This document shows positions 682 to 15,118 of a DNA stretch of 64,000 nt, one piece after another. The stretch lies in the IMG/VR virus record IMGVR_UViG_3300045051_000720, positions 62,001-126,000 of that record; one strand, 5' to 3'. Every line of letters starts with the position of its first letter. Within the stretch, counting starts at the first letter, position 1. Below the pieces are notes generated by a model. The model saw only the letters and a list, made by a program, of their open reading frames with translations, had not been told where the DNA came from and made no database searches. The position numbers and the translations under genes are program-made.

Positions 682-987
682 CTAGGGATAGAGTTCTATC
701 CCGTAGGGTAGCTCGACTACGTAGGATGCATGGAACCGCTCCTTGCCATCCGCCGCGAAATAGATGCACTCCTGATTGTTGTGGAAGGTCTCAAACCCCT
801 TCTGGCTACCCCGACTCCACCACGTGTTGCTATTAGCCTTTAGCCACGCCTCGAAGGCGTTTGCTGCCGCCTTGTAGTCGGGAGTTAAAAGCAAGGTATC
901 GCCGTCCCCACCCTCGGCTAGGCAGGCCTGTTCGAGGGCGAGGAAGATGGTGGGGAGGGTGGTTGACATGGGGTTGAATTGAGCCAT
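682..987 (-). CDS. Hypothetical protein
   Basis: 101-aa ORF co-oriented with neighbours. Confidence 0.55.
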   Translation of the reverse strand: MAQFNPMSTTLPTIFLALEQACLAEGGDGDTLLLTPDYKAAANAFEAWLKANSNTWWSRGSQKGFETFHNNQECIYFAADGKERFHASYVVELPYGIELYP

Positions 988-1847
988 TTGTCTCTGATGG
1001 CGAGAACGGTTTCTGTTGTAAAAGCCACCCCACCTACATTGGTTGGGTTGTATTGCCTAAGATAGGCTATAAATTTATCGTATTTCCTTGACATTCTGAT
1101 AGTTGCATCAGAGTAAAGATAGTCTAAAAACACTATGGACCCTCGGGTTGACAGTTTTATATCTTTAGCTCGGCTATGGGAGTAACCATGCAAACGGGGT
1201 TTGACCCCTAATCGTTGTTCAATAAATGTTTGAACTCCTTCACAAAAATATGGAGAACCCGTAATTGAAACCCCTATTTTTCTATCTTTGGTATTAAAAT
1301 ATACGCTTCCATCTCCGTCGAATACTCCTCTTAAAAAATGAGACATCAAATCTCTAGGTACCTGCTGTTCGCTTGGAAACTGGAGAATGAGTGACTTGGC
1401 CGGTACGCATCCTAATTTACTAAGAGCATCGCTAATTTTTCGGCTGTAAATAGCCAGTACATACTTTTGCTTATGGAAAGGTTTACGTTTTGCCGGTTGA
1501 TGTAAATTTTGTGGAGAACCCATGGCACGCGCCATTTCAATAAGTAGGTATTGGTCGGGTTCGCACAACTGAAGTGTCAATCCCTCACGATTATTACATC
1601 CGTCCGAATACATCAGCCCTAAAAAATAAGCCTTTTCCGGATCGTCAATACGATCAAAATACGTTTCATTACACGATCTAAACCTAGAAGTGCGACTAAC
1701 ATATGAATCATATTTCTTGAGGATATTTCTTATCTGATCTTCGGTCACGCCATAGTCTTTCGCTATGTCAGACGGCTTCCTATGTCCGTTGACATGAGCA
1801 TCTATGATTCTTGGATGCTGCGATGGAAGTATTTTGACGTTTGGCAA
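918..1847 (-). CDS. LAGLIDADG homing endonuclease with N-terminal HTH
   Basis: YFLGLMYSDGC and FLRGVFDGDGS motifs; AT-rich. Confidence 0.9.
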   Translation of the reverse strand: MPNVKILPSQHPRIIDAHVNGHRKPSDIAKDYGVTEDQIRNILKKYDSYVSRTSRFRSCNETYFDRIDDPEKAYFLGLMYSDGCNNREGLTLQLCEPDQYLLIEMARAMGSPQNLHQPAKRKPFHKQKYVLAIYSRKISDALSKLGCVPAKSLILQFPSEQQVPRDLMSHFLRGVFDGDGSVYFNTKDRKIGVSITGSPYFCEGVQTFIEQRLGVKPRLHGYSHSRAKDIKLSTRGSIVFLDYLYSDATIRMSRKYDKFIAYLRQYNPTNVGGVAFTTETVLAIRDKWLNSTPCQPPSPPSSSPSNRPA

Positions 1848-8577: not shown

Positions 8578-8665
8578 TGGCGGAAGCGAGAGGGCACGAT
8601 CCCCAACGCACGAGTCGTCCTGCGGTGTAGCACACCGTGGCAGTCGCCTGACTGCTTTCGCTTCC
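8578..8665 (-). tRNA. tRNA-Ser(GCT)
   Basis: Cloverleaf, long variable arm, G73-CCA. Confidence 0.8.
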
Positions 8666-8666
8666 G

Positions 8667-8755
8667 TGGCGGTAACAAGTGGGGTTCAACCACTGTGCAA
8701 TGAAGCACACTCTGGGTTTCGGGTCCAGTCGAGGAAAACGTCCTCAGTTGCTACC
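8667..8755 (-). tRNA. tRNA-Ser(CGA)
   Basis: Cloverleaf, long variable arm, GCCA end. Confidence 0.75.
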
Positions 8756-8842
8756 GGCGGAGTGGTGCCGTACTGCCCGGCTGCCGGTTGCCCGACACAA
8801 CGCTTTCCAAGCGCCGTCCACCTCTAGGTGGCCCAACCCTCC
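8756..8842 (-). tRNA. tRNA-Ser(GGA)
   Basis: GGCGC-TTGGAAA-GCGTT anticodon arm, long variable arm, bulged acceptor stem. Confidence 0.72.
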
Positions 8843-8875
8843 AAAAAGATACAGACCCGAGCGGGGTCTGTAAAG

Positions 8876-8969
8876 TGGCGGTGAGTTGAGATCTTGCGTC
8901 CCAAGGCGGGGTTGGCCCTCCTCCATTCGCTTTCAAGGCGGCGGCAGCGCCTCGGCTGCTTAACTCACC
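8876..8969 (-). tRNA. tRNA-Ser(TGA)
   Basis: CTTGAAA loop, long variable arm, GCCA end. Confidence 0.8.
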
Positions 8970-8973
8970 AAAG

Positions 8974-9049
8974 TGGTGCGGACACCCCGAGTTGCACGGG
9001 GACTATCCCTCGTTAGGACCGAGGTTGACTGTCTGTTGCCGATGTCCGC
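8974..9049 (-). tRNA. tRNA-Arg(CCT)
   Basis: CCTCG-GTCCTAA-CGAGG arm, ACCA end. Confidence 0.82.
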
Positions 9050-9537
9050 GAAAAATACTTGTCGCGCTCGACGGTGCGGCGACCCAGCTCTGCGCTGAGG
9101 AAGGCTGTCATCTTGCCGTTGTGACTCATGAGCTTGTCGGCCCACCCCACCATCAGCTGGTTGGGGCACACAAACGGTCCGCGCGCGTTGACGATCAGTT
9201 GGTAGGCATCAGAGTAAGGTATCCTGTGGTGGACCAGCCAGATGAAGGCTGCTGCGCTTGACCGCGATACGCCTGCGAAGCAGTGAAAGAGGATGGACTG
9301 GTCGGGGCTGGTTTGGGCGTAGACACCCAGTAGCCGCCGTATCATCGCCTCTGTGGGAGCGAGAGGGTTGGACGAGTTGCCCGTATCAGCGAACACAAAT
9401 GAGTGGAGAGTGAAGGGGTACTTGAACGCTCGGATGTCGGGGCCGGGTTGGTGGACCTCGTGGAAAGAGATGATGTGGTCCAGCAGAACCGTCGCGAAGG
9501 CAGGAACCTCGGAGACGCCACAAATAGCGAAGGGCAT
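9013..9537 (-). CDS. Cys-dependent (dual-specificity / tyrosine) phosphatase
   Basis: HCFAGVSRS P-loop, FAD acid loop and PN motif; own promoter at 9543-9571. Confidence 0.9.
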   Translation of the reverse strand: MPFAICGVSEVPAFATVLLDHIISFHEVHQPGPDIRAFKYPFTLHSFVFADTGNSSNPLAPTEAMIRRLLGVYAQTSPDQSILFHCFAGVSRSSAAAFIWLVHHRIPYSDAYQLIVNARGPFVCPNQLMVGWADKLMSHNGKMTAFLSAELGRRTVERDKYFSRTSATDSQPRS

Positions 9538-9572
9538 AGCCGATGCTAGTCCGTAATGAGGGCGCTGTCAAG

Positions 9573-9665
9573 TGGCGCGAACGGCAGGATTCTCACCCAC
9601 ATCAGGGCCGAGCGGCCCTTCACCTGCGTTCGAAGCGCAGTTGACGCTATTATGTCGGCGTTCGC
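9573..9665 (-). tRNA. tRNA-Arg(TCG), long variable arm
   Basis: CTGCG-CTTCGAA-CGCAG arm, GCCA end. Confidence 0.8.
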
Positions 9666-9666
9666 A

Positions 9667-9755
9667 TGGTCTCGACGGCGAGAGTTGCACTCGCAGATTG
9701 GCTTGCGCCAGACGGTTTAGAGGACCGTTGCCTTGTCTACCCGAGCCCCGTCGAG
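9667..9755 (-). tRNA. tRNA-Arg(TCT), long variable arm
   Basis: ACGGT-CCTCTAA-ACCGT arm, ACCA end. Confidence 0.75.
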
Positions 9756-9760
9756 GGAAA

Positions 9761-9837
9761 TGGCGCGAGACCGGGGATTCAAACCCCGACTGATCCTCGT
9801 TCGCAACGAGGGCGACTATTCGGTTGCCGAGTCTCGC
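9761..9837 (-). tRNA. tRNA-Arg(GCG)
   Basis: CCTCG-TTGCGAA-CGAGG arm, GCCA end. Confidence 0.82.
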
Positions 9838-9932
9838 AAAGAGATTGCACCGTCCCCAGTCGATGCGTCGCTGGGGAGCAGGACACCAGTAGGACATCGC
9901 ATTAGTCCACCCGGAGATTCCACGGTGCAAAT

Positions 9933-10007
9933 TGGGGCGCACGACCGGATCTACCCCGGCCCTCCAAGCGTCACAGGCTCGGGTGCTTCTACTACACTAC
10001 GTGCGCC
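9933..10007 (-). tRNA. tRNA-His(GTG)
   Basis: G-1:C73 pair, CTGTGAC loop. Confidence 0.85.
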
Positions 10008-10013
10008 ATAAGG

Positions 10014-10089
10014 TGGAGCTTCAGTAGGGGTTCTCACCCTCCTCTCTCGGATACAAGCCGAGGCCATCGAATGTCTATGGGTCTGAAGC
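10014..10089 (-). tRNA. tRNA-Thr(TGT)
   Basis: CTCGG-CTTGTAT-CCGAG arm, CCA end. Confidence 0.82.
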
Positions 10090-10093
10090 GAAA

Positions 10094-10167
10094 TGGAGCC
10101 GAGGACCGGTAACGCTCCGGTGTCTATCGTTTACGAAACGATGGCTCTGCTTTTGAGCTACCAAGGC
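10094..10167 (-). tRNA. tRNA-Thr(CGT)
   Basis: ATCGT-TTCGTAA-ACGAT arm, CCA end. Confidence 0.85.
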
Positions 10168-10171
10168 AAAG

Positions 10172-10247
10172 TGGTGGTCCCGGGAGAGCAACGATCCTCC
10201 ACGTCACGCCTATAAAGCGCGCAGTCTGCCGATTAACTTACAGGACC
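10172..10247 (-). tRNA. tRNA-Ile(TAT)
   Basis: CGCGC-TTTATAG-GCGTG arm, ACCA end. Confidence 0.78.
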
Positions 10248-10361
10248 AAAAGGAGGGCATCGGAATCATCTCGGCGCGCAGTGTGCACCTTACGATCCGT
10301 CAGCCCTATAGGTGGTTTGTTTACGAGACGGTGCGTTTAACGACACAGGGCGCAAACGAAA

Positions 10362-10481
10362 TGGTTCCACGGCTCAGGTCGATCAACCCCACCTTTGGCC
10401 AGCCACCTCAGCGAGGTTTGGTAGCTCGTTAGGCCCTTCGCTTCTGACGCCTCCAGTTGGATTGCCCTCAGTGACCGTGAA
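10362..10481 (-). ncRNA. Oversized tRNA-like RNA (120 nt)
   Basis: TTCACGG/CCGTGGA acceptor-like stem plus ACCA; internal arms non-canonical. Confidence 0.45.
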
Positions 10482-10484
10482 AGA

Positions 10485-10570
10485 TGGTGGGCGTGGAGGG
10501 ATGCGAGCCCTCAAGGACAACGGAATTTGAACCCGTCGCTTCTACCAGTTTCGCTTTCGTCCACACGCCC
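10485..10570 (-). tRNA. tRNA-Leu(CAA), atypical architecture
   Basis: ACGGG-TTCAAAT-TCCGT arm; extra GGACG/TGTCC pairing. Confidence 0.8.
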
Positions 10571-10572
10571 GA

Positions 10573-10655
10573 TCGGCATGGTGGGATTCGGACCCACAGG
10601 GGATAGCGCATTTTAAGTGCGCCGGTTGTCGCCAGTTTCCCTTATCCACATGCCG
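10573..10655 (-). tRNA. tRNA-Leu(TAA), atypical architecture
   Basis: GCGCA-CTTAAAA-TGCGC arm; extra GGATA/TATCC pairing; CCA not encoded. Confidence 0.8.
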
Positions 10656-10661
10656 GTAAGA

Positions 10662-10736
10662 TGGTGGGACCATGGAGCCAACGCACTCCAATCTCCGCGC
10701 TGAGAACGCGGCGAACTACTCTTATTCGATGATCCC
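10662..10736 (-). tRNA. tRNA-Glu(CTC)
   Basis: CCGCG-TTCTCAG-CGCGG arm, ACCA end. Confidence 0.82.
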
Positions 10737-10737
10737 G

Positions 10738-10820
10738 TAGGCGTGGAGAGATTCGGACTCTCAAGGACACGTGATCCTAAGTCACGCGGTTCTGCCAATT
10801 TCCCTTCCGTCCACACGCCC
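10738..10820 (-). tRNA. tRNA-Leu(TAG), atypical architecture
   Basis: CGTGA-CTTAGGA-TCACG arm; extra GGACG/TGTCC pairing. Confidence 0.8.
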
Positions 10821-10826
10821 ATAAAA

Positions 10827-10917
10827 TGGTGGCCTCGGGGGGAGTCGGACCCCCACGCTACTATGATTTCGCTCGCGAATCTCATTCGCGCATGTCTACC
10901 AGTTCCATCACGAGGCC
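10827..10917 (-). tRNA. tRNA-Leu(GAG)
   Basis: Class II cloverleaf, ATGAGAT loop, ACCA end. Confidence 0.85.
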
Positions 10918-10994
10918 GAGGTCCCAGTCGGAGTTGCACCGACCCTGTTCGTCATTACCAATGACGCGCCGTGGCTACACTCGGCATTGGGACC
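10918..10994 (-). tRNA. tRNA-Thr(GGT)
   Basis: CGTCA-TTGGTAA-TGACG arm. Confidence 0.82.
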
Positions 10995-10999
10995 ATAAA

Positions 11000-11076
11000 T
11001 GGGGGCTCAGGTCAGATTTGCACTGACGACCGTCTCCGTATGGGGGAGCCGCGCTAGCTAGCTGCGCCACTGAGCC
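11000..11076 (-). tRNA. tRNA-Met(CAT) elongator (Ile2 not excluded)
   Basis: CTCC-CCCATAC-GGAG arm, CCA end. Confidence 0.72.
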
Positions 11077-11077
11077 G

Positions 11078-11153
11078 TGGTGGTCCCGTCGAGATTCGCA
11101 CTCGCCTCATCCGATTAAGAGTCGGAGTCCTCGCCTATCTAGGAGTCGAGACC
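11078..11153 (-). tRNA. tRNA-Lys(CTT)
   Basis: TCCGA-CTCTTAA-TCGGA arm, ACCA end. Confidence 0.87.
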
Positions 11154-11161
11154 GTAAAGTA

Positions 11162-11452
11162 TTCAACCGCGTAGCCGCGTTTCTGTTGCCGGGCCATCCC
11201 GACCGACATCCATTTCTCTCACCCACGGTCACCCGTGAACGGGTATCGTTTATAGACACCTGCACCAACCACGCCCTGCTTGACGGCCAGAACTAGCCTC
11301 GGGCTCCATTTGGCTTGCTGGTATCGTGTGGTTATCGCGAGTGTCTACCGACGTAACATCGTCGGGACTGCTCTCCCATCGACTTCTGTCCAGACGCGAA
11401 CTTGACCTCTACGCACGCATCGAGTGCGCGGCAGCGGATGTCTGCGGTTGAA
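11162..11452 (-). ncRNA. rnpB: RNase P RNA (compact, ~290 nt)
   Basis: P1 TTCAACCGC/GCGGTTGAA; P2 GACATCC/GGATGTC; CR-I GAGGTCAAGTTCGCGT pairing with CR-V AACAGAAACGCGGCTA (P4); CAGCAAGCCAAAT; GAGAGAAATG. Confidence 0.85.
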
Positions 11453-11455
11453 AGA

Positions 11456-11530
11456 TGGTGGAGGTACCGAGTGCCGCCCTCGGGCTTGAGTCATGCCATG
11501 ACCCTGTGCTGCTGTTATCACTATACCCCC
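11456..11530 (-). tRNA. tRNA-Ala(GGC)
   Basis: G3:U70 pair, ATGGCAT loop, ACCA end. Confidence 0.87.
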
Positions 11531-11604
11531 GCTGCCTCGGAGCGAATTGCACGCCCACCTAACACCTTCAGAGGGTGTCGGACTAGCTGTTATCCCACGA
11601 GGCA
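11531..11604 (-). tRNA. tRNA-Gln(CTG)
   Basis: U1-A72, ACACC-CTCTGAA-GGTGT arm. Confidence 0.85.
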
Positions 11605-11638
11605 AAAGTGATAGGGGTGACAAAACTGACCCGTCATT

Positions 11639-11709
11639 GGGTCAGTAGTGTAGTGGTAGCACGTCCGCCTGACTGGCGGGGGGCGCGGGTTCAAATCCCG
11701 TCTGATCCA
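11639..11709 (+). tRNA. tRNA-Val(GAC), inverted relative to the array
   Basis: Canonical GTGT-AGTGGTA-GCAC D arm and GGTTCAAATCC T loop on the + strand. Confidence 0.72.
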
Positions 11710-11715
11710 TTTAAT

Positions 11716-11791
11716 TGGCTGCCCACCACGGATGACAGCCGTGACCCTCGCCTTCAAAGGGCGGTATGCTTGACGTTTACATCAATGGGCA
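11716..11791 (-). tRNA. tRNA-Gln(TTG)
   Basis: CTTTGAA loop, GCCA end. Confidence 0.82.
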
Positions 11792-11798
11792 ATGAGAG

Positions 11799-11876
11799 TG
11801 GTCGGCGTGGAGGGATTCGCACCCCCGATCCTTCGCTTCCGGAGCGAGCATGTTGGCTAGGCTACACCACACGCCG
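11799..11876 (-). tRNA. tRNA-Pro(CGG)
   Basis: C1-G72, TCCGGAA loop, ACCA end. Confidence 0.85.
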
Positions 11877-11977
11877 ATATTGCGGGCCGGTTATCCATCC
11901 GGCGGCACCCGGCTTGATGGTGAGCAAGACGGAGACTCTGGAATTGGCGTGATTTTATGGCTCACGCCGCCGCAAAA

Positions 11978-12055
11978 TGGTCCTCGCGGCAGGCTTCGCT
12001 CCTGCGGCCTTCTGCATGTCGTGCAGCCGCTCTAACTGGGCTGAGCTACGCGAGG
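11978..12055 (-). tRNA. tRNA-Val(GAC)
   Basis: CTGC-ACGACAT-GCAG arm, ACCA end. Confidence 0.82.
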
Positions 12056-12060
12056 GAAAG

Positions 12061-12138
12061 TGGTCGGGCCAGTTGGATTCGCACCAACGATCTCATGCTC
12101 CCCGAGCATGCGCGATGACTAGGCTACGCTATGACCCG
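12061..12138 (-). tRNA. tRNA-Pro(GGG)
   Basis: CATGC-TCGGGGA-GCATG arm, ACCA end. Confidence 0.87.
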
Positions 12139-12237
12139 ATTGGCAGATACCGTCTGTTACTCCCACCGTGGTGTCCCGTCTGCCGCGGGGCTTTAGGTGG
12201 TGTTTGGGTAATCCAAACGTCTCGTGAACGGCTAAGA

Positions 12238-12336
12238 TGGCTGTACCGGTAGGAGCCGCCCCTACACCGCCGCAGGTCATGCGTACGGGCTCGCTTAACA
12301 GGCGAGTGCAACGAACGTGCTATTTGCCTCGGTACA
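12238..12336 (-). tRNA. tRNA-Asn(GTT), long variable arm
   Basis: CTCGC-CTGTTAA-GCGAG arm, GCCA end, 99 nt. Confidence 0.78.
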
Positions 12337-12342
12337 ATAAAA

Positions 12343-12418
12343 TGGTCGTCGCTGAGGGACTCGCACCCCCGAACCTCTGCGTGTAGGGCAGGTACCGTAG
12401 CTGCTGGGTCAAGCGACG
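12343..12418 (-). tRNA. tRNA-Val(TAC)
   Basis: CCTACAC loop, ACCA end. Confidence 0.82.
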
Positions 12419-12422
12419 AAAG

Positions 12423-12499
12423 TGGCGCGATAGATGGGTGCTGCCCCCACTTGTCTCGGCATAGACAGTGCCGCGAGCATGCTGTTGCTCTTCTACCGC
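12423..12499 (-). tRNA. tRNA-Asp(GTC)
   Basis: CGGCA-CTGTCTA-TGCCG arm, GCCA end. Confidence 0.85.
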
Positions 12500-12501
12500 G
12501 T

Positions 12502-12573
12502 ACGGATGGAGGGACTCGCACCCCCGTTATGTCCGGTCCCAAACCGGAAGCCATTGCTGCTAGGCGACATCCG
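12502..12573 (-). tRNA. tRNA-Pro(TGG)
   Basis: TCCGG-TTTGGGA-CCGGA arm. Confidence 0.8.
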
Positions 12574-12580
12574 TGTGAAA

Positions 12581-12653
12581 TGGATGCAGGGCCGAGGAAT
12601 CGCACCCGGTCAGGGCGACGGGTATGAACCGCGCTTGGTCTAACCTCCCTGCG
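12581..12653 (-). tRNA. Initiator-like tRNA-fMet(CAT) with reduced D arm
   Basis: C1:A72 mismatch, TTCATAC loop, CCA end. Confidence 0.7.
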
Positions 12654-12660
12654 TAAAGTG

Positions 12661-12810
12661 TTCCCTTTGTAGGCGTGCTCCAACGCCTCGTTGTTTGTCA
12701 AAATGGCCGGTGCTCTACCGTTGAGCTAGCATCCTCCTTGCGAAGGACCGCAGGTGTCGAACCTGTATCTCCGGCAAGTGTTACCTTGCGGGCTTTTGAC
12801 CTCTAGGGAA
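12661..12810 (-). ncRNA. YrlA-like Y RNA (circularly permuted tRNA-mimic domain on a long stem)
   Basis: T arm (CAGGTTCGACACCTG), then closed acceptor stem, then D arm (GCTCAACGGTAGAGC), enclosed by GCCGG/CCGGC, GTCAAAA/TTTTGAC and TTCCCT/AGGGAA stems. Confidence 0.72.
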
Positions 12811-12812
12811 AG

Positions 12813-12885
12813 TGGTGGAGCCCCGGGCATCGCAGCCCAACGACAGCCGGATTTTCAGTCCAGCCCGTGCACTCGCACTGACTCC
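12813..12885 (-). tRNA. tRNA-Phe(GAA)
   Basis: CTGGA-CTGAAAA-TCCGG arm, ACCA end; short D arm. Confidence 0.72.
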
Positions 12886-12943
12886 GGAGCCATCGTTAGG
12901 TCCGCCGATGGCGCAGGCGGTCTCGGGTTATTGACGAGGAAGA

Positions 12944-13020
12944 TGGGACGGACGGTGGGTAGCGCGCCCACATGAAGCCGGATTTGGAGTTCGGTGCCTT
13001 ACTTGTCGAGCCACGTCCGT
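12944..13020 (-). tRNA. tRNA-Trp(CCA)
   Basis: CTCCAAA loop, CCA end. Confidence 0.8.
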
Positions 13021-13195
13021 ATGAAAAGGTGGAGCGAAGAGATGGTCATTTATTCACCGGGCTGGGACCAATCCACGAGGTGCCCGATCCAGATGTCTCC
13101 TGCCTCGCTCCGTTTGGAGACCAACGAGTGATGTGGTGTCAGGTTCCTGTAGGCTTCACTGACACCGACCCGCGGCGTGAACCGCGAGGTGAAGA

Positions 13196-13269
13196 TGGTG
13201 GTCAAGTCGGGTGCTGCCCCCGCGTCTAACGGTTATCGACCGTTGGCTCTACTGTTGAGCTACATGACC
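13196..13269 (-). tRNA. tRNA-Ile(GAT)
   Basis: AACGG-TCGATAA-CCGTT arm, ACCA end. Confidence 0.87.
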
Positions 13270-13399
13270 AAAATTGCTGTCGCGGTCAACCCGCGTTTCG
13301 GCTCAGCTTGGCCGTTTGCAAAATGGCGACTACGTTAACCAGTCTTGACCGGAGGCGTGCTTGCGGGCGCGTCGTAGCCCGTTGGGTATTAGCCCAAAG

Positions 13400-13491
13400 T
13401 GGTGGACCCGGAGGGAGTTGCACCCCCGACGCCCCGTTAGGGGTCCAGATTTACAGTCTGGTGCAGCCATCTGACAGCTACCTCGTGGTCC
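13400..13491 (-). tRNA. tRNA-Tyr(GTA)
   Basis: CCAGA-CTGTAAA-TCTGG arm, long variable arm, ACCA end. Confidence 0.85.
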
Positions 13492-13497
13492 GAAAAA

Positions 13498-13572
13498 TGG
13501 AGCGTCGTGCGGGACTCCCACCCGCGTGTGTCTGCTTGGAAGGCAGATGCCTTGGTTCTCGGCCAACGACGC
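13498..13572 (-). tRNA. tRNA-Gly(TCC)
   Basis: TCTGC-CTTCCAA-GCAGA arm, TCCA end. Confidence 0.87.
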
Positions 13573-13632
13573 ATGGGGTTTATCGCCACCGCGGAGCGGC
13601 TGATTGGTTACAGCGGGGTGGAAGCCCCAAGA

Positions 13633-13707
13633 TGGTGGAGTCAACGAGATCCGCCCTCGTATGTCACGGATGCAAACCGTGTGCCTTTCTATGTCGGCCA
13701 TGACCCC
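13633..13707 (-). tRNA. tRNA-Ala(TGC)
   Basis: G3:U70, CACGG-TTTGCAT-CCGTG arm. Confidence 0.87.
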
Positions 13708-13709
13708 AT

Positions 13710-13781
13710 TGGACCCGGCGAGTGCCGCCCTCGCGCCTCCGCGTTGCGAACGCAGCGTGCTACTGTTGTCACCACGAGCCC
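13710..13781 (-). tRNA. tRNA-Ala(CGC)
   Basis: G3:U70, CTGCG-TTCGCAA-CGCGG arm. Confidence 0.85.
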
Positions 13782-13786
13782 GAAAA

Positions 13787-13967
13787 GAGTGACACGATAG
13801 ACTTGTCCGGCAGTCTGGGGAGTCTTGCGGGACTCCTATGGCCTAAACCACGTCTTACGCCGCCTCTTGCCTTAACGCGCGGCCCTTTCCCTTGCGGGTA
13901 CTCAGGGGCTCATCGGCTGTGGATAGAGGACGGACTGTTGGTCCGGGTAGTATCTATCGTGTTGCCC
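13787..13967 (-). ncRNA. 6S-RNA-like rod (~180 nt)
   Basis: Closing stem ACACGATAGAT/GTCTATCGTGT, internal stems, central bubble with 3-prime hairpin GGAGTC-CCGCAA-GACTCC. Confidence 0.45.
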
Positions 13968-14053
13968 CGGTTAGGATCGACTCCGCCGAGGCGAAAAAGG
14001 ATGCCGGACCCCAGCTTTCGCTTGCGGGCGTCCCCTCGCGGGTCCGACGTAAG

Positions 14054-14129
14054 TGGAGGCGCGCCACGGTGCTGCCCCGTGCAAACAGTGTTTTGCAAAC
14101 ACGTCTCGTCGCTGGCTGAGTCGCGCGCC
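14054..14129 (-). tRNA. tRNA-Cys(GCA)
   Basis: TTGCAAA loop, U73-CCA. Confidence 0.85.
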
Positions 14130-14176
14130 ATTGAGCTAACCACGCCAAGGGGGACCAACAGGTGTCGCTCAGGAAA

Positions 14177-14252
14177 TGGTGGGTCCATCGGGCATCGATC
14201 CCGCTTCCACGGTTTAAAAGACCGCTGCTAATCCGGCTACAGCTCTGGACCC
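14177..14252 (-). tRNA. tRNA-Lys(TTT)
   Basis: GCGGT-CTTTTAA-ACCGT arm, ACCA end. Confidence 0.85.
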
Positions 14253-14254
14253 AT

Positions 14255-14326
14255 TGCGGGTAGGGAGACTTGCGCTCCCCTCTCAGCCTTGGCAAAGCCG
14301 TGCGTCGCTATCTACGCTTCACCCGC
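14255..14326 (-). tRNA. tRNA-Gly(GCC)
   Basis: CGGCT-TTGCCAA-GGCTG arm. Confidence 0.82.
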
Positions 14327-14427
14327 GAAAAGTGTCCGATGGGAGAACTGTCAAACCCCCTATGCCCTATGCGCATGGCGTCTCGTTGGTCGGACCCAAC
14401 GGCAGGTATCGATCCTGCGAACATGAC

Positions 14428-14502
14428 GGTGACCGCACCCGGATTCCCACCGGGGTTCTTCGCTGGAAAGGCGAGAGTACTGGGGTGCTATACGATGCGG
14501 CC
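14428..14502 (-). tRNA. tRNA-Glu(TTC)
   Basis: TCGC-CTTTCCA-GCGA arm. Confidence 0.82.
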
Positions 14503-14515
14503 AAAAGTGGGCTGA

Positions 14516-15118
14516 CTACGAAGCCGTCCGACCAGTCGCCGGAGTGAGAAATGACGGAACACAAGGACGGTCAGGACGATTATACCGACTCCTTGGACAG
14601 AGAGCACCTAAAGGTAGAGCCGGTGGGGTAATCTTAGGCGCGTTCTCCCTCTTCCGTTTGTGTTCTATTTGACCATGAAAGCGATCAAATCCTAGCATTC
14701 TAGCGGCTGTGATAGCAACGTGATGGTCTTGTGTCTGTCCGAGACGAAAGGAGAGATCGTTGCGATCTTCTAGTCCGAAATCTTTGACGAGCTTATCTTT
14801 TTGGGAGCTGGTCAGATACTGGAAGATAGCCCTTCGATGAATACTTCGAGGCTCTTTCACCGTTGGCTTGTTTCGGGTAGCCCTTTCTGCGCGGTGATGT
14901 GCCTCGTGACAATCCCGACACAGTACCTCCAGATCCTCCATTCGTTCGTTACCACCTACCCGTTCGTAGGTTTTGTGATGGACATCGGTGCCGTGTTCAT
15001 GACATCGATTACAAACGGGACCATAGTAAGCAATCGCCTCAGCCCGCTTGGCCTTCCAGATGGGTGACTGGAGGTATTGACGATGGAGCAATTGATTGTC
15101 GGTAAGATGCTGGGCCAC
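14516..15118 (-). CDS. HNH endonuclease
   Basis: YLQSPIWKAKR...CNRC...VHHKTY...DLEVLCRDCHEAHH. Confidence 0.88.
   Translation of the reverse strand: MAQHLTDNQLLHRQYLQSPIWKAKRAEAIAYYGPVCNRCHEHGTDVHHKTYERVGGNERMEDLEVLCRDCHEAHHRAERATRNKPTVKEPRSIHRRAIFQYLTSSQKDKLVKDFGLEDRNDLSFRLGQTQDHHVAITAARMLGFDRFHGQIEHKRKRENAPKITPPALPLGALCPRSRYNRPDRPCVPSFLTPATGRTAS

What the first reader, a model, noticed from the sequence alone, without database searches (positions are those of the whole stretch)
12661..12810. YrlA-type Y RNA (permuted tRNA mimic) with no Ro60 gene in view
SEEN: tRNA arms in swapped order (T arm, loop-closed acceptor stem, D arm) on top of nested stems GCCGG/CCGGC, GTCAAAA/TTTTGAC and TTCCCT/AGGGAA. 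It keeps canonical GG and TTCGA elbow loops, unlike the real array tRNAs. KNOWN: bacterial YrlA RNAs have this permuted tRNA domain plus a Ro60-binding helix with a GNCGAA(N)G motif; here it reads GTCAAAAG. INFERENCE: it binds host Ro60/Rsr or acts as a decoy for tRNA-elbow-binding enzymes.
Basis: partly seen in the sequence, partly recalled or inferred. Interest (0 to 1): 0.68.

Follow-up and report, generated by a model that had tools for sequence, protein, structure and literature searches.

The report
Orphan YrlA-like tRNA mimic in phage
A 219-kb soil phage carries, inside its tRNA gene array, a ~150-nt gene for a circularly permuted tRNA look-alike of the YrlA (bacterial Y RNA) type, but no gene for the Ro60 protein that partners every described phage Y RNA, so it either borrows a host Ro60 or works without one.

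Summary
On the minus strand (12811->12661) the order is outer helix, second helix, 5-bp "anticodon-like" stem, 4-nt variable loop, T arm with UUCGA, 7-bp acceptor-like stem closed by GCAA, D arm with GG, then the closing strands. It is not two adjacent tRNAs. Its tertiary 15:48 pair is A:U, fitting the G:C/A:U covariation in 15 of 16 related elements. An independent sediment contig and a groundwater contig keep 12661-12886 at ~99% identity while flanks are replaced, and the break falls exactly at the helix end (12661).

Architecture and topology match YrlA, including mycobacteriophage Catera's. Formal membership is incomplete:
- Rfam gives 17.5 bits against a cut-off of 69 (Catera's own YrlA gets 36).
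- The Ro60-binding motif has a mismatch (GUCAAAAG vs GNCGAANG).
- No Ro-family gene exists in the 96%-complete genome by five profiles and two custom searches, whereas 6 of 7 comparison virus records have one beside the RNA.

The phage does encode RtcB. All 20 tabulated minus-strand tRNA or tRNA-like genes of the array have non-canonical T-loops (16 also lack the D-loop GG); this element keeps the canonical elbow. Best reading: a Ro60-gene-less YrlA-class elbow mimic. Function is inferred, expression untested, host unknown.

The parts
12661..12811 (-). Whole YrlA-like tRNA-mimic RNA gene (~150 nt), from the outer helix 5' strand to its 3' strand
   Evidence: Fold and layout. Rfam YrlA aligns end to end over 12679-12796 at 17.5 bits. 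Conservation in independent contigs X2 and X3 stops exactly at 12661.
12805..12810 (-). P1 5' strand UUCCCU; pairs with 12661-12666 (AGGGAA)
   Evidence: X2 and X3 carry C instead of U at 12805, which turns the innermost pair U-A into C.A without compensation.
12793..12800 (-). P2 5' strand GUCAAAA plus G; a one-mismatch look-alike of the Ro60-binding motif GNCGAAN0-1G. Pairs with 12697-12703 (UUUUGAC).
   Evidence: Motif definition from Chen 2014.
12774..12789 (-). V-like hairpin GCAAG-GUAACA-CUUGC upstream of the T arm; overlaps P3 by 2 nt and competes with it
   Evidence: Appears in the MFE and centroid folds. Isoenergetic with the P3 fold. V stem-loops in this position are common in YrlA-like RNAs.
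12771..12775 (-). P3 5' strand GCCGG (equivalent to anticodon-stem positions 39-43); pairs with 12706-12710 (CCGGC, positions 27-31)
   Evidence: 5/5 Watson-Crick pairs placed immediately outside the variable loop and N26.
12750..12770 (-). Variable loop AGAU (U48 pairs with A15) and T arm (A)CAGG-UUCGACA-CCUG(C) with a canonical T-loop
12731..12748 (-). Acceptor-like stem-loop GUCCUUC-GCAA-GGAGGAU: 7 bp plus a GNRA loop, no free CCA end
   Evidence: All seven positions differ from L059 while all seven pairs are kept.
12712..12728 (-). U8-A9 and D arm GCUC-AACGGUA-GAGC with A14, A15, G18 and G19
   Evidence: The D stem is identical to the YrlA-invariant GCUC/GAGC.
12671..12688 (-). 3'-side hairpin AGGCGU-UGGAGC-ACGCCU between P2 and P1
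   Evidence: Catera's YrlA has a hairpin in the equivalent position.
12819..12891 (-). Neighbouring odd tRNA-like gene (GAA anticodon loop, 8-bp acceptor or G-1, followed by CCACCA). It is conserved together with the element as one block.
   Evidence: Rfam tRNA-Sec model 22 bits, E 0.11. ARAGORN does not call it. Its fold is not better than shuffles. X3 and X2 contigs cover 12661-12886 and 12661-12874 at ~99%.

Best explanation
The element is a gene for a YrlA-class RNA: a circularly permuted, anticodon-less, non-chargeable tRNA mimic.

What is shown:
- The sequence encodes T, acceptor-like and D arms in permuted order with a canonical elbow and a 15:48 pair, closed by nested helices.
- It is a discrete unit conserved in related phages.
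- The phage genome contains no Ro-family gene.

What is inferred:
1. It is transcribed with the minus-strand tRNA array. A promoter-like site lies at 15161->15133 and a terminator-like site at 8872->8850.
2. It is released by the enzymes that trim its tRNA neighbours. The upstream tRNA-like gene ends in CCA 5 nt before P1.
3. It folds into an L-shape whose elbow looks like that of a standard tRNA.
4. It acts through that elbow, binding (titrating or recruiting) a host factor that recognises canonical tRNA elbows. This would not need a phage Ro60 ring.
5. It belongs to a tRNA-conflict toolkit that also includes about 20 tRNAs with remodelled elbows and an RtcB RNA ligase.

With a 7-bp acceptor-like stem it may, like M. 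smegmatis YrlA, be nicked by RNase P.
For: Architecture and chance tests.

Class-level structure, from 16 elements including this one:
- 88.4% of cells are paired, against 65.3% in shuffles and 34-47% with slid partners.
- Covariation score 0.608 against 0.195, exceeded by 0 of 500 shuffles.
- The Levitt pair is C:G in 10 and U:A in 5 sequences; ours is U:A.

Discrete conserved unit:
- The X3 sediment contig (37 kb) matches 12661-12886 with 1 substitution and 1 indel, while four of five other matched tRNA blocks are only 93-94% identical.
- 1300 unrelated bases replace the 106 nt downstream.
- X2 also breaks at 12661.
- X7 keeps the downstream flank up to 12661 but lacks the element.

No Ro-family gene:
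- TROVE, vWA_Ro60, phrog_850, DUF2828 and DUF7788 all give no hit at E<=1 or better.
- A custom HMM of 7 Ro proteins and phmmer against 1938 ORFs give nothing.
- The same tools find a Ro-like gene beside the RNA in 6 of 7 comparison virus records and in 12 of 23 YrlA-like loci.

Other support:
- The Ro motif is degenerate.
- The closest structural relative, L059, sits between tRNAs and has no terminal helix.
- Elbow contrast with the array's own tRNAs.
- RtcB is present.
- Wang et al. predict that YrlA's effector is an elbow-binding tRNA protein and report RNase P cleavage of a 7-bp-stem YrlA.
Against: - There is no expression data; no RNA run holds the sequence.
- The near-identical copies offer no compensatory changes. 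The one substitution weakens P1.
- The thermodynamic MFE prefers the V hairpin over P3.
- Rfam scores it at 17.5 bits, and the model gives sub-threshold hits in 13 of 14 control genomes.
- My own covariance model could not separate YrlA-like elements from plain tRNA-tRNA junctions.
- The long P1/P2 terminal helix, with a near-motif on the 5' strand next to an internal loop, is what a Ro60-binding module looks like. A host Rsr partner therefore remains quite possible.
- The record is 96%, not 100%, complete.
- No elbow-binding target has been identified.
Confidence: 0.45

Rival explanations
1. It is a conventional Y RNA that uses the host's Ro60/Rsr. The P1/P2 terminal helix with GUCAAAAG docks on a host-encoded Ro60 ring, and the tRNA-like module tethers an effector such as PNPase, as in the Deinococcus/Salmonella RYPER complex. 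The phage thereby redirects host RNA decay.
For: - The family's only demonstrated partner is Ro60/Rsr.
- The element keeps a 6+7-bp terminal helix. A near-motif lies on the 5' strand next to an internal loop, at about the distance from the T arm seen in the Rfam consensus.
- Catera's published YrlA has the same topology, and I found no exact motif in it by eye (GCCGAGAG).
- Thermus phage phiLo Ro60/Yrl recruits host PNPase.
Against: - There is no Ro-family gene in 219 kb, whereas in the comparison sets the gene lies within about 2.5 kb of the RNA.
- The mismatch removes the G of the conserved CGAA.
- L059 has no terminal helix.
- The host is unknown, so a host rsr could not be checked.
Confidence: 0.3
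2. It is a relic: a YrlA gene left behind after loss of the phage Ro60 gene, or a recently acquired cassette, with no present function.
For: - Phage tRNA arrays are mosaic. The element is present in relatives X2/X3 and absent in X7, with a junction at 12661.
- HNH and LAGLIDADG endonuclease genes flank the array.
- 99% identity could reflect recent transfer rather than selection.
- The Ro motif is degenerate.
Against: - All helices and both elbow loops are intact: 7/7, 5/5, 7/7 and 6/6 pairs.
- The block is more conserved than 4 of 5 neighbouring tRNA blocks in X3, while spacers are replaced.
- It keeps a canonical elbow in a genome whose own tRNAs have drifted or been selected away from it.
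Confidence: 0.13
3. It is a permuted tRNA precursor that is processed into a working, chargeable molecule. RNase P would cut in the GCAA loop, CCA would be added, and the ends might be joined by the phage RtcB.
For: - A 7-bp acceptor-like stem like that of M. smegmatis YrlA, which is cut by RNase P and receives CCA.
- The phage encodes RtcB.
Against: - There are no anticodon-loop nucleotides and no bulge-helix-bulge motif. P3 continues into 18 nt on one side and 2 nt on the other, then a 7-bp helix.
- ARAGORN calls no tRNA or permuted tmRNA here.
- The phage has no CCA-adding enzyme.
- The stem has G2.U71, not G3.U70.
Confidence: 0.08
4. It is an artefact: the 3' half of one tRNA followed by the 5' half of the next (a 'dimeric tRNA' hit).
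For: Chen 2014 warn about this. Most hits of my first loose pattern, and many high scores of my own model, were such junctions.
Against: The two acceptor-like strands pair with each other 7/7 across a 4-nt loop. P3's strands pair 5/5. No partner acceptor strand, D arm or anticodon arm exists upstream or downstream.
Confidence: 0.02

Closest known systems
Mycobacteriophage (Bixzunavirus, e.g. Catera/Bxz1) YrlA, one of the 22 phage YrlA RNAs of Chen et al. 2014
   Same: - Phage-encoded and associated with the tRNA gene region.
- Same topology: long outer helix, 5' hairpins including a V stem-loop, T arm with UUCGA, loop-closed acceptor-like stem, D arm GCUC/GAGC with GG, 3' hairpin, outer helix.
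- Also scores below Rfam's cut-off (36 bits).
   Different: - Catera's RNA lies 190 nt upstream of its Ro60 gene on the same strand. Ours has no Ro-family gene in the genome.
- Catera has YUAY (UUAC) in the V region, a long interrupted acceptor-like stem and G15:C48. Ours has a 7-bp stem with GCAA, A15:U48, a 5-bp GC-rich P3 and no YUAY.
Mycobacterium smegmatis / Salmonella Typhimurium YrlA (Rfam RF02553; crystal structure of the tRNA-like domain, Wang et al. 2018)
   Same: A circularly permuted tRNA mimic with all the elbow tertiary contacts possible. M. smegmatis also has a 7-bp acceptor-like stem.
   Different: Those RNAs are bound by Rsr, are encoded beside rsr (and rtcBA in Salmonella), and carry an exact GNCGAAN0-1G. 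Ours fails all three sequence or context criteria.
L059 element (metagenome contig Ga0163200_1017782, positions 36-105), undescribed
   Same: - Same junction CCGG-AGAU, same 1 + 7 bp/GCAA + 2 register, same D arm with A15:U48, same CCGG P3.
- Lies inside a tRNA array.
- T and acceptor-like stems covary with ours.
   Different: It has no P1/P2 outer helices or side hairpins and is directly flanked by tRNAs whose elbows are canonical. The contig is only 2.2 kb, so the presence of Ro cannot be judged.
Circularly permuted tRNA genes (Cyanidioschyzon merolae) and two-piece tmRNA genes
   Same: The 3' half (T arm, 3' acceptor strand) precedes the 5' half (5' acceptor strand, D arm) in the gene. This comparison rests on my own knowledge of those families.
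   Different: There is no anticodon loop, no processing motif at the termini, no CCA, no tag reading frame and no ARAGORN call.

Membership tests
YrlA (Chen et al. 2014; Rfam RF02553) | Near-invariant T stem-loop with a tRNA-type T-loop | tested here: met
   CAGG-UUCGACA-CCUG with G53, U54, U55, C56, G57, A58 and C61. The fifth pair is A.C.
YrlA (Chen et al. 2014; Rfam RF02553) | Near-invariant D stem-loop (GCUC/GAGC, GG in the loop) preceded by UA | tested here: met
   UA-GCUC-AACGGUA-GAGC. The D stem is identical in all 16 aligned elements, though that was fixed by my search pattern.
YrlA (Chen et al. 2014; Rfam RF02553) | [quoted passage not shown] | tested here: met
   7/7 pairs plus GCAA. 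It uses the minority 7-bp/GNRA register, shared with L059, L060 and L038.
YrlA (Chen et al. 2014; Rfam RF02553) | tRNA tertiary pairs possible, with 15:48 covariation (G:C or A:U) | tested here: met
   A15:U48. 15 of 16 elements keep a standard pair: C:G in 10, U:A in 5.
YrlA (Chen et al. 2014; Rfam RF02553) | Domain closed by an anticodon-like stem that continues into a terminal helix formed by the 5' and 3' ends | tested here: met
   P3 5 bp, P2 7 bp, P1 6 bp. Flank cofold reached by 16 of 2000 shuffles. P3 competes with an isoenergetic V hairpin.
YrlA (Chen et al. 2014; Rfam RF02553) | GNCGAAN0-1G motif near the 5' end (presumed Ro60 contact) | tested here: not met
   Only GUCAAAAG, with G->A at the fourth position. 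No exact match in the 5' flank.
YrlA (Chen et al. 2014; Rfam RF02553) | Conserved YUAY at the start of the V loop | tested here: not met
   The V-like loop reads GUAACA and the junction reads AUAC; there is no YUAY.
YrlA (Chen et al. 2014; Rfam RF02553) | Encoded within ~4 kb of a Ro60 ortholog on the same strand | tested here: not met
   No Ro-family gene anywhere in the 219-kb record: PF05731, PF25045, phrog_850, PF11443, PF25043, custom HMMs and phmmer. No minus-strand ORF over 400 aa lies within 8 kb.
YrlA (Chen et al. 2014; Rfam RF02553) | Rfam gathering score (69 bits) | tested here: not met
   17.5 bits, E 0.06-1.3 depending on search space. Ro-linked phage and bacterial copies score 28-63 bits and also fail, so the test is over-strict for this diversity.
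YrlA (Chen et al. 2014; Rfam RF02553) | Bound by Ro60/Rsr; modified by TruB/DusA; (M. smegmatis) cut by RNase P | not testable with these tools
   This needs biochemistry. The complex predictor offered here takes proteins only.
Functional permuted tRNA gene | Anticodon loop nucleotides and a processing motif at the joined termini | tested here: not met
   P3 is followed by 2 nt and preceded by 18 nt, then a 7-bp helix. There is no 7-nt loop and no ARAGORN call.
Adjacent-tRNA (dimeric tRNA) junction | Each half has its own partner strands in the flanks; the two acceptor strands are not complementary to each other | tested here: not met
   The strands pair with each other 7/7. The best distant partners reach 6/7 including G.U, in the wrong places.

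The most novel reading that the evidence does not exclude
YrlA-type tRNA mimics can work without any Ro60. In this phage the canonical-elbow mimic is a decoy or adaptor for a host factor that recognises standard tRNA elbows (a defence nuclease, RNase P or a modification enzyme). The phage's own translation would run on a parallel set of tRNAs whose elbow has been rewritten (A18/G55-type) so that they escape that factor, with RtcB repairing collateral cuts. This would be an 'orthogonal elbow plus decoy' counter-defence strategy.
Probability: 0.25. Interest if true: 0.85.

Novelty: new variant of a known kind. Interest (0 to 1): 0.62.

Why it matters
Every Y RNA described so far, from humans to phages, is defined by its Ro60 partner, and the role of the tRNA-like half of bacterial Y RNAs is an open question (Chen 2014; Wang 2018).

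A well-formed, conserved YrlA-type RNA in a near-complete phage genome with no Ro-family gene separates the two halves of the problem. Either the phage exploits a host Ro60, which would be a new kind of host takeover, or the tRNA-like module has a Ro60-independent job.

The surroundings point to the tRNA elbow as a battleground between this phage and its host, and they give a concrete system for finding the unknown elbow-binding effector:
- a full set of phage tRNAs with a rewritten elbow;
- an RtcB ligase;
- cassette-like exchange of the element between related phages.

Tried and rejected
1. A loose T-loop...D-arm pattern in IMG/VR returned almost only adjacent tRNA pairs. Abandoned for a fixed-geometry pattern.
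2. Pif1 helicase as an anchor for related loci: only 27-28% identical relatives. They were not examined further.
3. My own covariance model R1 of the T/acceptor-like/D core, built without the window. It scored the element at 48.8 bits but scored plain tRNA-tRNA junctions at 40-60 bits, so it is uninformative as a membership test.
4. Host inference:
   - RtcB is <=32%, DNA polymerase <=30% and terminase <=25% identical to any cultured phage, with hits scattered over unrelated hosts.
   - blastn of the array against cultured phages gave no match.
   - The host remains unknown.
5. First Ro60 screen, TROVE plus vWA_Ro60 only. It led me to think the L030/L065/L066 proviruses were Ro-less. That was wrong. 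They carry a divergent DUF2828/DUF7788 Ro-like gene found through a DNA match to DyoEdafos. The claim is withdrawn, and our phage was re-screened with the broader models.
6. One search used an antisense ORF of L034 in a custom HMM. It was redone correctly.
7. L062 (complete 42.6-kb phage G008) as a second orphan: it shares P3 and the junction, but its acceptor-like stem is poor, there are no tRNAs nearby, and its fold is no better than shuffles. I keep it only as a doubtful relative.
8. RtcB as a constant companion of phage YrlA-like RNAs: absent from all seven comparison records.
9. TROVE search in metagenome records: they are not held by that tool. Replaced by a local HMM census of the fetched flanks.
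10. Two Rfam calls exceeded size limits. Two review papers were not held.
11. No RNA-seq run holds the sequence, so expression could not be examined.

Full report
**What is there.** The window is bases 62001-126000 of a 219,464-bp virus record from a rhizosphere metagenome. The record is linear and estimated 96% complete. Between about 8.5 and 14.3 kb it carries a dense tRNA array on the minus strand: 14 ARAGORN calls, 13 of them on the minus strand, plus further Rfam tRNA calls. The finding lies inside this array and must be read on the minus strand.

Read 5'->3' (12811->12661) the RNA is as follows:
- UUCCCU (P1)
- AGAG
- GUCAAAA (P2)
- an 18-nt stretch that can form a hairpin GCAAG-GUAACA-CUUGC
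- GCCGG (P3)
- AGAU(A)
- T arm CAGG-UUCGACA-CCUG
- CG
- GUCCUUC-GCAA-GGAGGAU
- GC-UA
- D arm GCUC-AACGGUA-GAGC
- A
- CCGGC (P3')
- CA
- UUUUGAC (P2')
- a hairpin AGGCGU-UGGAGC-ACGCCU
- AGGGAA (P1')

**Is it more than chance, and is it two tRNAs?** Chen et al. 2014 warn that two adjacent tRNAs mimic this arm order. My first loose pattern search did return almost only such junctions. Here that explanation fails:
- The two acceptor-like strands pair with each other 7/7 across a 4-nt GNRA loop.
- The two P3 strands pair 5/5 directly outside the variable loop and N26.
- Neither has a proper partner in the flanks.

With the core held fixed, the flanks cofold at -32.2 kcal/mol against -23.3 +/- 3.2 for dinucleotide shuffles, and only 16 of 2000 shuffles do as well. 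The fold with P3 (-44.5) and the fold in which the V-like hairpin replaces P3 (-44.9) are isoenergetic. Nearest-neighbour energies ignore the tertiary contacts that would favour the tRNA-like form.

**Comparative evidence.**

(a) Near relatives. Contigs from independent studies were laid on 11500-14500.
- A 37-kb sediment contig (X3) is a colinear relative of the array. Its tRNA genes match, and its spacers are replaced.
- Over window 12661-12886 it differs by one substitution and one 2-nt insertion, which falls in the CA linker. Four of the five other matched blocks are only 93-94% identical. 1300 unrelated bases replace the 106 nt downstream of 12661.
- A groundwater contig (X2) matches 12661-12874 and also diverges at 12661.
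- A soil contig (X7) keeps the downstream flank up to exactly 12661 and then diverges.
- The 3' end of P1 is therefore a boundary in three independent relatives, and the element behaves as a discrete cassette together with the odd tRNA-like gene at 12819-12891.
- These copies are too similar to show compensatory changes. The one substitution (12805) turns the innermost P1 pair into C.A.

(b) The structural class. A fixed-geometry pattern that leaves all stems free recovered YrlA-like elements from viral, genomic and metagenomic collections. In an alignment of 16 cores including ours:
- 88.4% of pair cells are standard pairs, against 65.3% in shuffles and 34-47% with slid partners.
- The covariation score is 0.608 against 0.195 (0 of 500 shuffles reach it).
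- The tertiary 15:48 pair is C:G in 10 and U:A in 5 sequences. Ours is U:A, matching the covariation Chen et al. used as evidence for a tRNA fold.
- The D stem and loop motifs were fixed by the pattern. The T-stem interior, acceptor-like stem, P3 and position 48 were not.

(c) The closest structural relative is L059 positions 36-105, a minimal version lying between tRNAs in another array. It shares the CCGG-AGAU junction, the 7-bp/GCAA register, A15:U48 and a CCGG P3. All seven acceptor-stem positions differ from ours while all seven pairs are kept. It has no outer helices.

**Comparison with YrlA.** By the published criteria:
- Met: the T arm, the D arm, the acceptor-like stem-loop, the tertiary pair and the closing helix.
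- Not met: the exact GNCGAAN0-1G motif (it reads GUCAAAAG), the YUAY element, and linkage to Ro60.

Rfam's YrlA model aligns end to end at this spot, but at 17.5 bits against a gathering score of 69. It gives sub-threshold hits in 13 of 14 control genomes, so the score alone proves nothing. Bona fide Ro-linked copies also fail the threshold:
- Catera's YrlA scores 36.1 bits.
- Other phage copies score 28-46 bits.
- Three tandem copies next to a Verrucomicrobium Ro60 score 49-63 bits.

Catera's RNA has the same topology as ours: outer helix, 5' hairpins including V, T arm, acceptor-like stem, D arm, 3' hairpin. A home-made covariance model could not separate such elements from tRNA junctions and is disregarded.

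**Ro60.** My first screens, TROVE and vWA_Ro60, were negative for the phage, but they turned out to have a blind spot. A DNA match led to a divergent 'Ro-like RNA binding protein' type, Pfam DUF2828 + DUF7788, which those models miss and which PHROG 850 covers.

After that correction:
- 6 of 7 comparison virus records have a Ro-family gene beside their YrlA-like RNA.
- 12 of 23 YrlA-like loci have one inside the fetched flank. Most of the rest are short contigs. None of 5 tRNA-junction controls has one.
- In cultured phages, Ro60 (363 records, mostly actinophages) lies in or next to the tRNA cluster.

Our phage remains negative with phrog_850, DUF2828 and DUF7788 at E<=1. It is also negative with a 7-protein Ro-family HMM and with phmmer of seven Ro proteins against all 1938 ORFs. 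Those seven proteins only partly detect one another by phmmer. The five TROVE-type proteins are mutually detectable at E from about 1e-5 to 1e-122. The two divergent DUF2828-type proteins (L066, DyoEdafos) find each other but none of the classical ones. The absence is therefore well supported for 96% of the genome, and it is unusual for this RNA class.

**Context.**
- The phage encodes a full-length RtcB RNA ligase about 56 kb downstream, outside the window, and a protein with a 2H-phosphoesterase/Acb1-like domain. It has no CCA-adding enzyme.
- None of the 20 minus-strand tRNA or tRNA-like genes tabulated in the array has the canonical GTTCRA T-loop. At least ten read N54-G55-C56-R57-A58. Sixteen lack GG in the D-loop and typically have AG there.
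- Only the mimic and one opposite-strand tRNA-Val keep the standard elbow.
- A strong promoter-like site (15161->15133) and a terminator-like hairpin (8872->8850) bracket the array on the minus strand. The element has no signals of its own.
- The upstream tRNA-like gene ends in CCA 5 nt before P1.

**How it most likely works.**
- Shown: the architecture, the conservation as a unit, and the absence of a Ro-family gene.
- Inferred: co-transcription with the array and release by tRNA-processing enzymes; an L-shaped fold with a standard elbow on a body that can be neither charged nor decoded; action through the elbow on a host factor.

I rank the explanations as follows:
- Ro60-independent reading: 0.45. 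The motif is degenerate, the nearest relative has no terminal helix, and the elbow contrast with the phage's own tRNAs suggests that the canonical elbow is what matters.
- Host-Rsr reading: 0.30. It is favoured by the retained terminal helix and by family precedent, including phiLo's recruitment of host PNPase.
- Relic: 0.13.
- Processed permuted tRNA: 0.08.
- tRNA-junction artefact: 0.02.

Wang et al. predicted that YrlA's unknown effector is an elbow-binding tRNA protein, and noted that a 7-bp acceptor-like stem makes M. smegmatis YrlA an RNase P substrate. Both points apply here.

**Novelty and limits.** In the papers I could search, every phage Y RNA is paired with a phage Ro60. I found no description of an orphan one, but two reviews were not held.

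I class this as a new variant of a known kind. The limits are:
- no expression data;
- no host;
- no compensatory changes in P1-P3;
- a thermodynamic alternative to P3.

Noticed in passing
window 8578-14326, minus strand (all array tRNAs): The tRNA elbow is systematically remodelled. None of the 20 tabulated minus-strand tRNA or tRNA-like genes has the canonical GTTCRA T-loop; at least ten read U/A54-G55-C56-R57-A58, e.g. GTGCGAA, GTGCAAn, GAGCGAA. Sixteen lack G18G19 and typically have AG instead, i.e. an apparent G18/U55 -> A18/G55 swap. Many have an encoded CCA. This would remove the TruB target U55 and could change recognition by elbow-binding proteins.
   Followed up: partly
window 12819-12891 (-), with CCACCA at 12818-12813: An odd tRNA-like gene conserved at ~99% together with the mimic in X2/X3. 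It has a 6-bp anticodon stem with loop CUGAAAA (anticodon GAA), an 8-bp acceptor (or G-1 plus 7 bp), a tiny D arm and a 6-nt T-loop. ARAGORN does not call it; Rfam tRNA-Sec gives 22 bits.
   Followed up: partly
window 11638-11710 (+): A fully canonical tRNA-Val(gac) (Rfam 60 bits) on the opposite strand, in a gap of the minus-strand array. The array also has its own non-canonical tRNA-Val(gac) at 11978-12055.
   Followed up: no
window 12575-12660 (-): The spacer between the mimic and tRNA-Pro(tgg) looks by eye like a degenerate tRNA (GCAGGGA...GGGTGCGATTCC...CCCTGC). Neither tRNA tool calls it. It is conserved in the X7 contig but replaced by 1300 nt in X3.
   Followed up: no
G000:C1:131010-132506 (outside the window; L028 1351-2847): A full-length RtcB RNA ligase (498 aa, 279 bits) next to a PD-(D/E)XK nuclease, <=32% identical to any cultured-phage RtcB.
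   Followed up: partly
G000:C1:23247-25772 (outside the window; L068): An 842-aa protein with a central 2H-phosphoesterase domain (2'-5' RNA ligase superfamily, 33.8 bits; Acb1 anti-CBASS model 24.7 bits, below its cut-off).
   Followed up: no
L066 9052-10488(-); L079 2544-3962(-) (DyoEdafos gp55): A divergent Ro-like family (Pfam DUF2828 + DUF7788) sits beside YrlA-like RNAs but is invisible to the TROVE and vWA_Ro60 models. PHROG 850 unites it with classical Ro60. Surveys of Ro60 that rely on TROVE alone will undercount.
   Followed up: yes
L038 5276-7522 (Verrucomicrobium sp. BvORR106); L033 779-2621 with G004:53413-55059: Tandem arrays of three YrlA-like RNAs. In Verrucomicrobium they lie just downstream of a divergent Ro60 (TROVE 24.9 bits, vWA_Ro60 75.9 bits). 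In a 74-kb phage contig they are interleaved with tRNAs upstream of a TROVE gene.
   Followed up: partly
L012 1974-2046 and L014 (IMG/VR contigs): A composite tRNA-like sequence: 5' acceptor strand, D arm, T arm, a closed hairpin CGGCACC-GTC-GGTGCCG, a second D arm, then the 3' acceptor strand and GCCA.
   Followed up: no
window 14516-15118 (-) and 918-1847 (-): HNH and LAGLIDADG endonuclease genes flank the tRNA array. A strong promoter-like site at 15161->15133 lies just upstream of the HNH gene. This fits the cassette-like mosaicism of the array.
   Followed up: no
window ~17100-56900 (+): A large cluster of sugar-modifying genes: several glycosyltransferases, two DegT/DnrJ aminotransferases, a GDP-mannose 4,6-dehydratase, and a D12 adenine methyltransferase nearby. 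Possibly DNA or virion glycosylation.
   Followed up: no
L078 9406-9485 and 9850-9975 (Streptomyces phage Jay2Jay): In the Ro60-containing tRNA array, Rfam reports a short tmRNA-like match (33 bits, below cut-off) and a 126-nt 'tRNA' match (33 bits), but no YrlA at E<=0.1. The Y RNA of this phage may be one of these.
   Followed up: no
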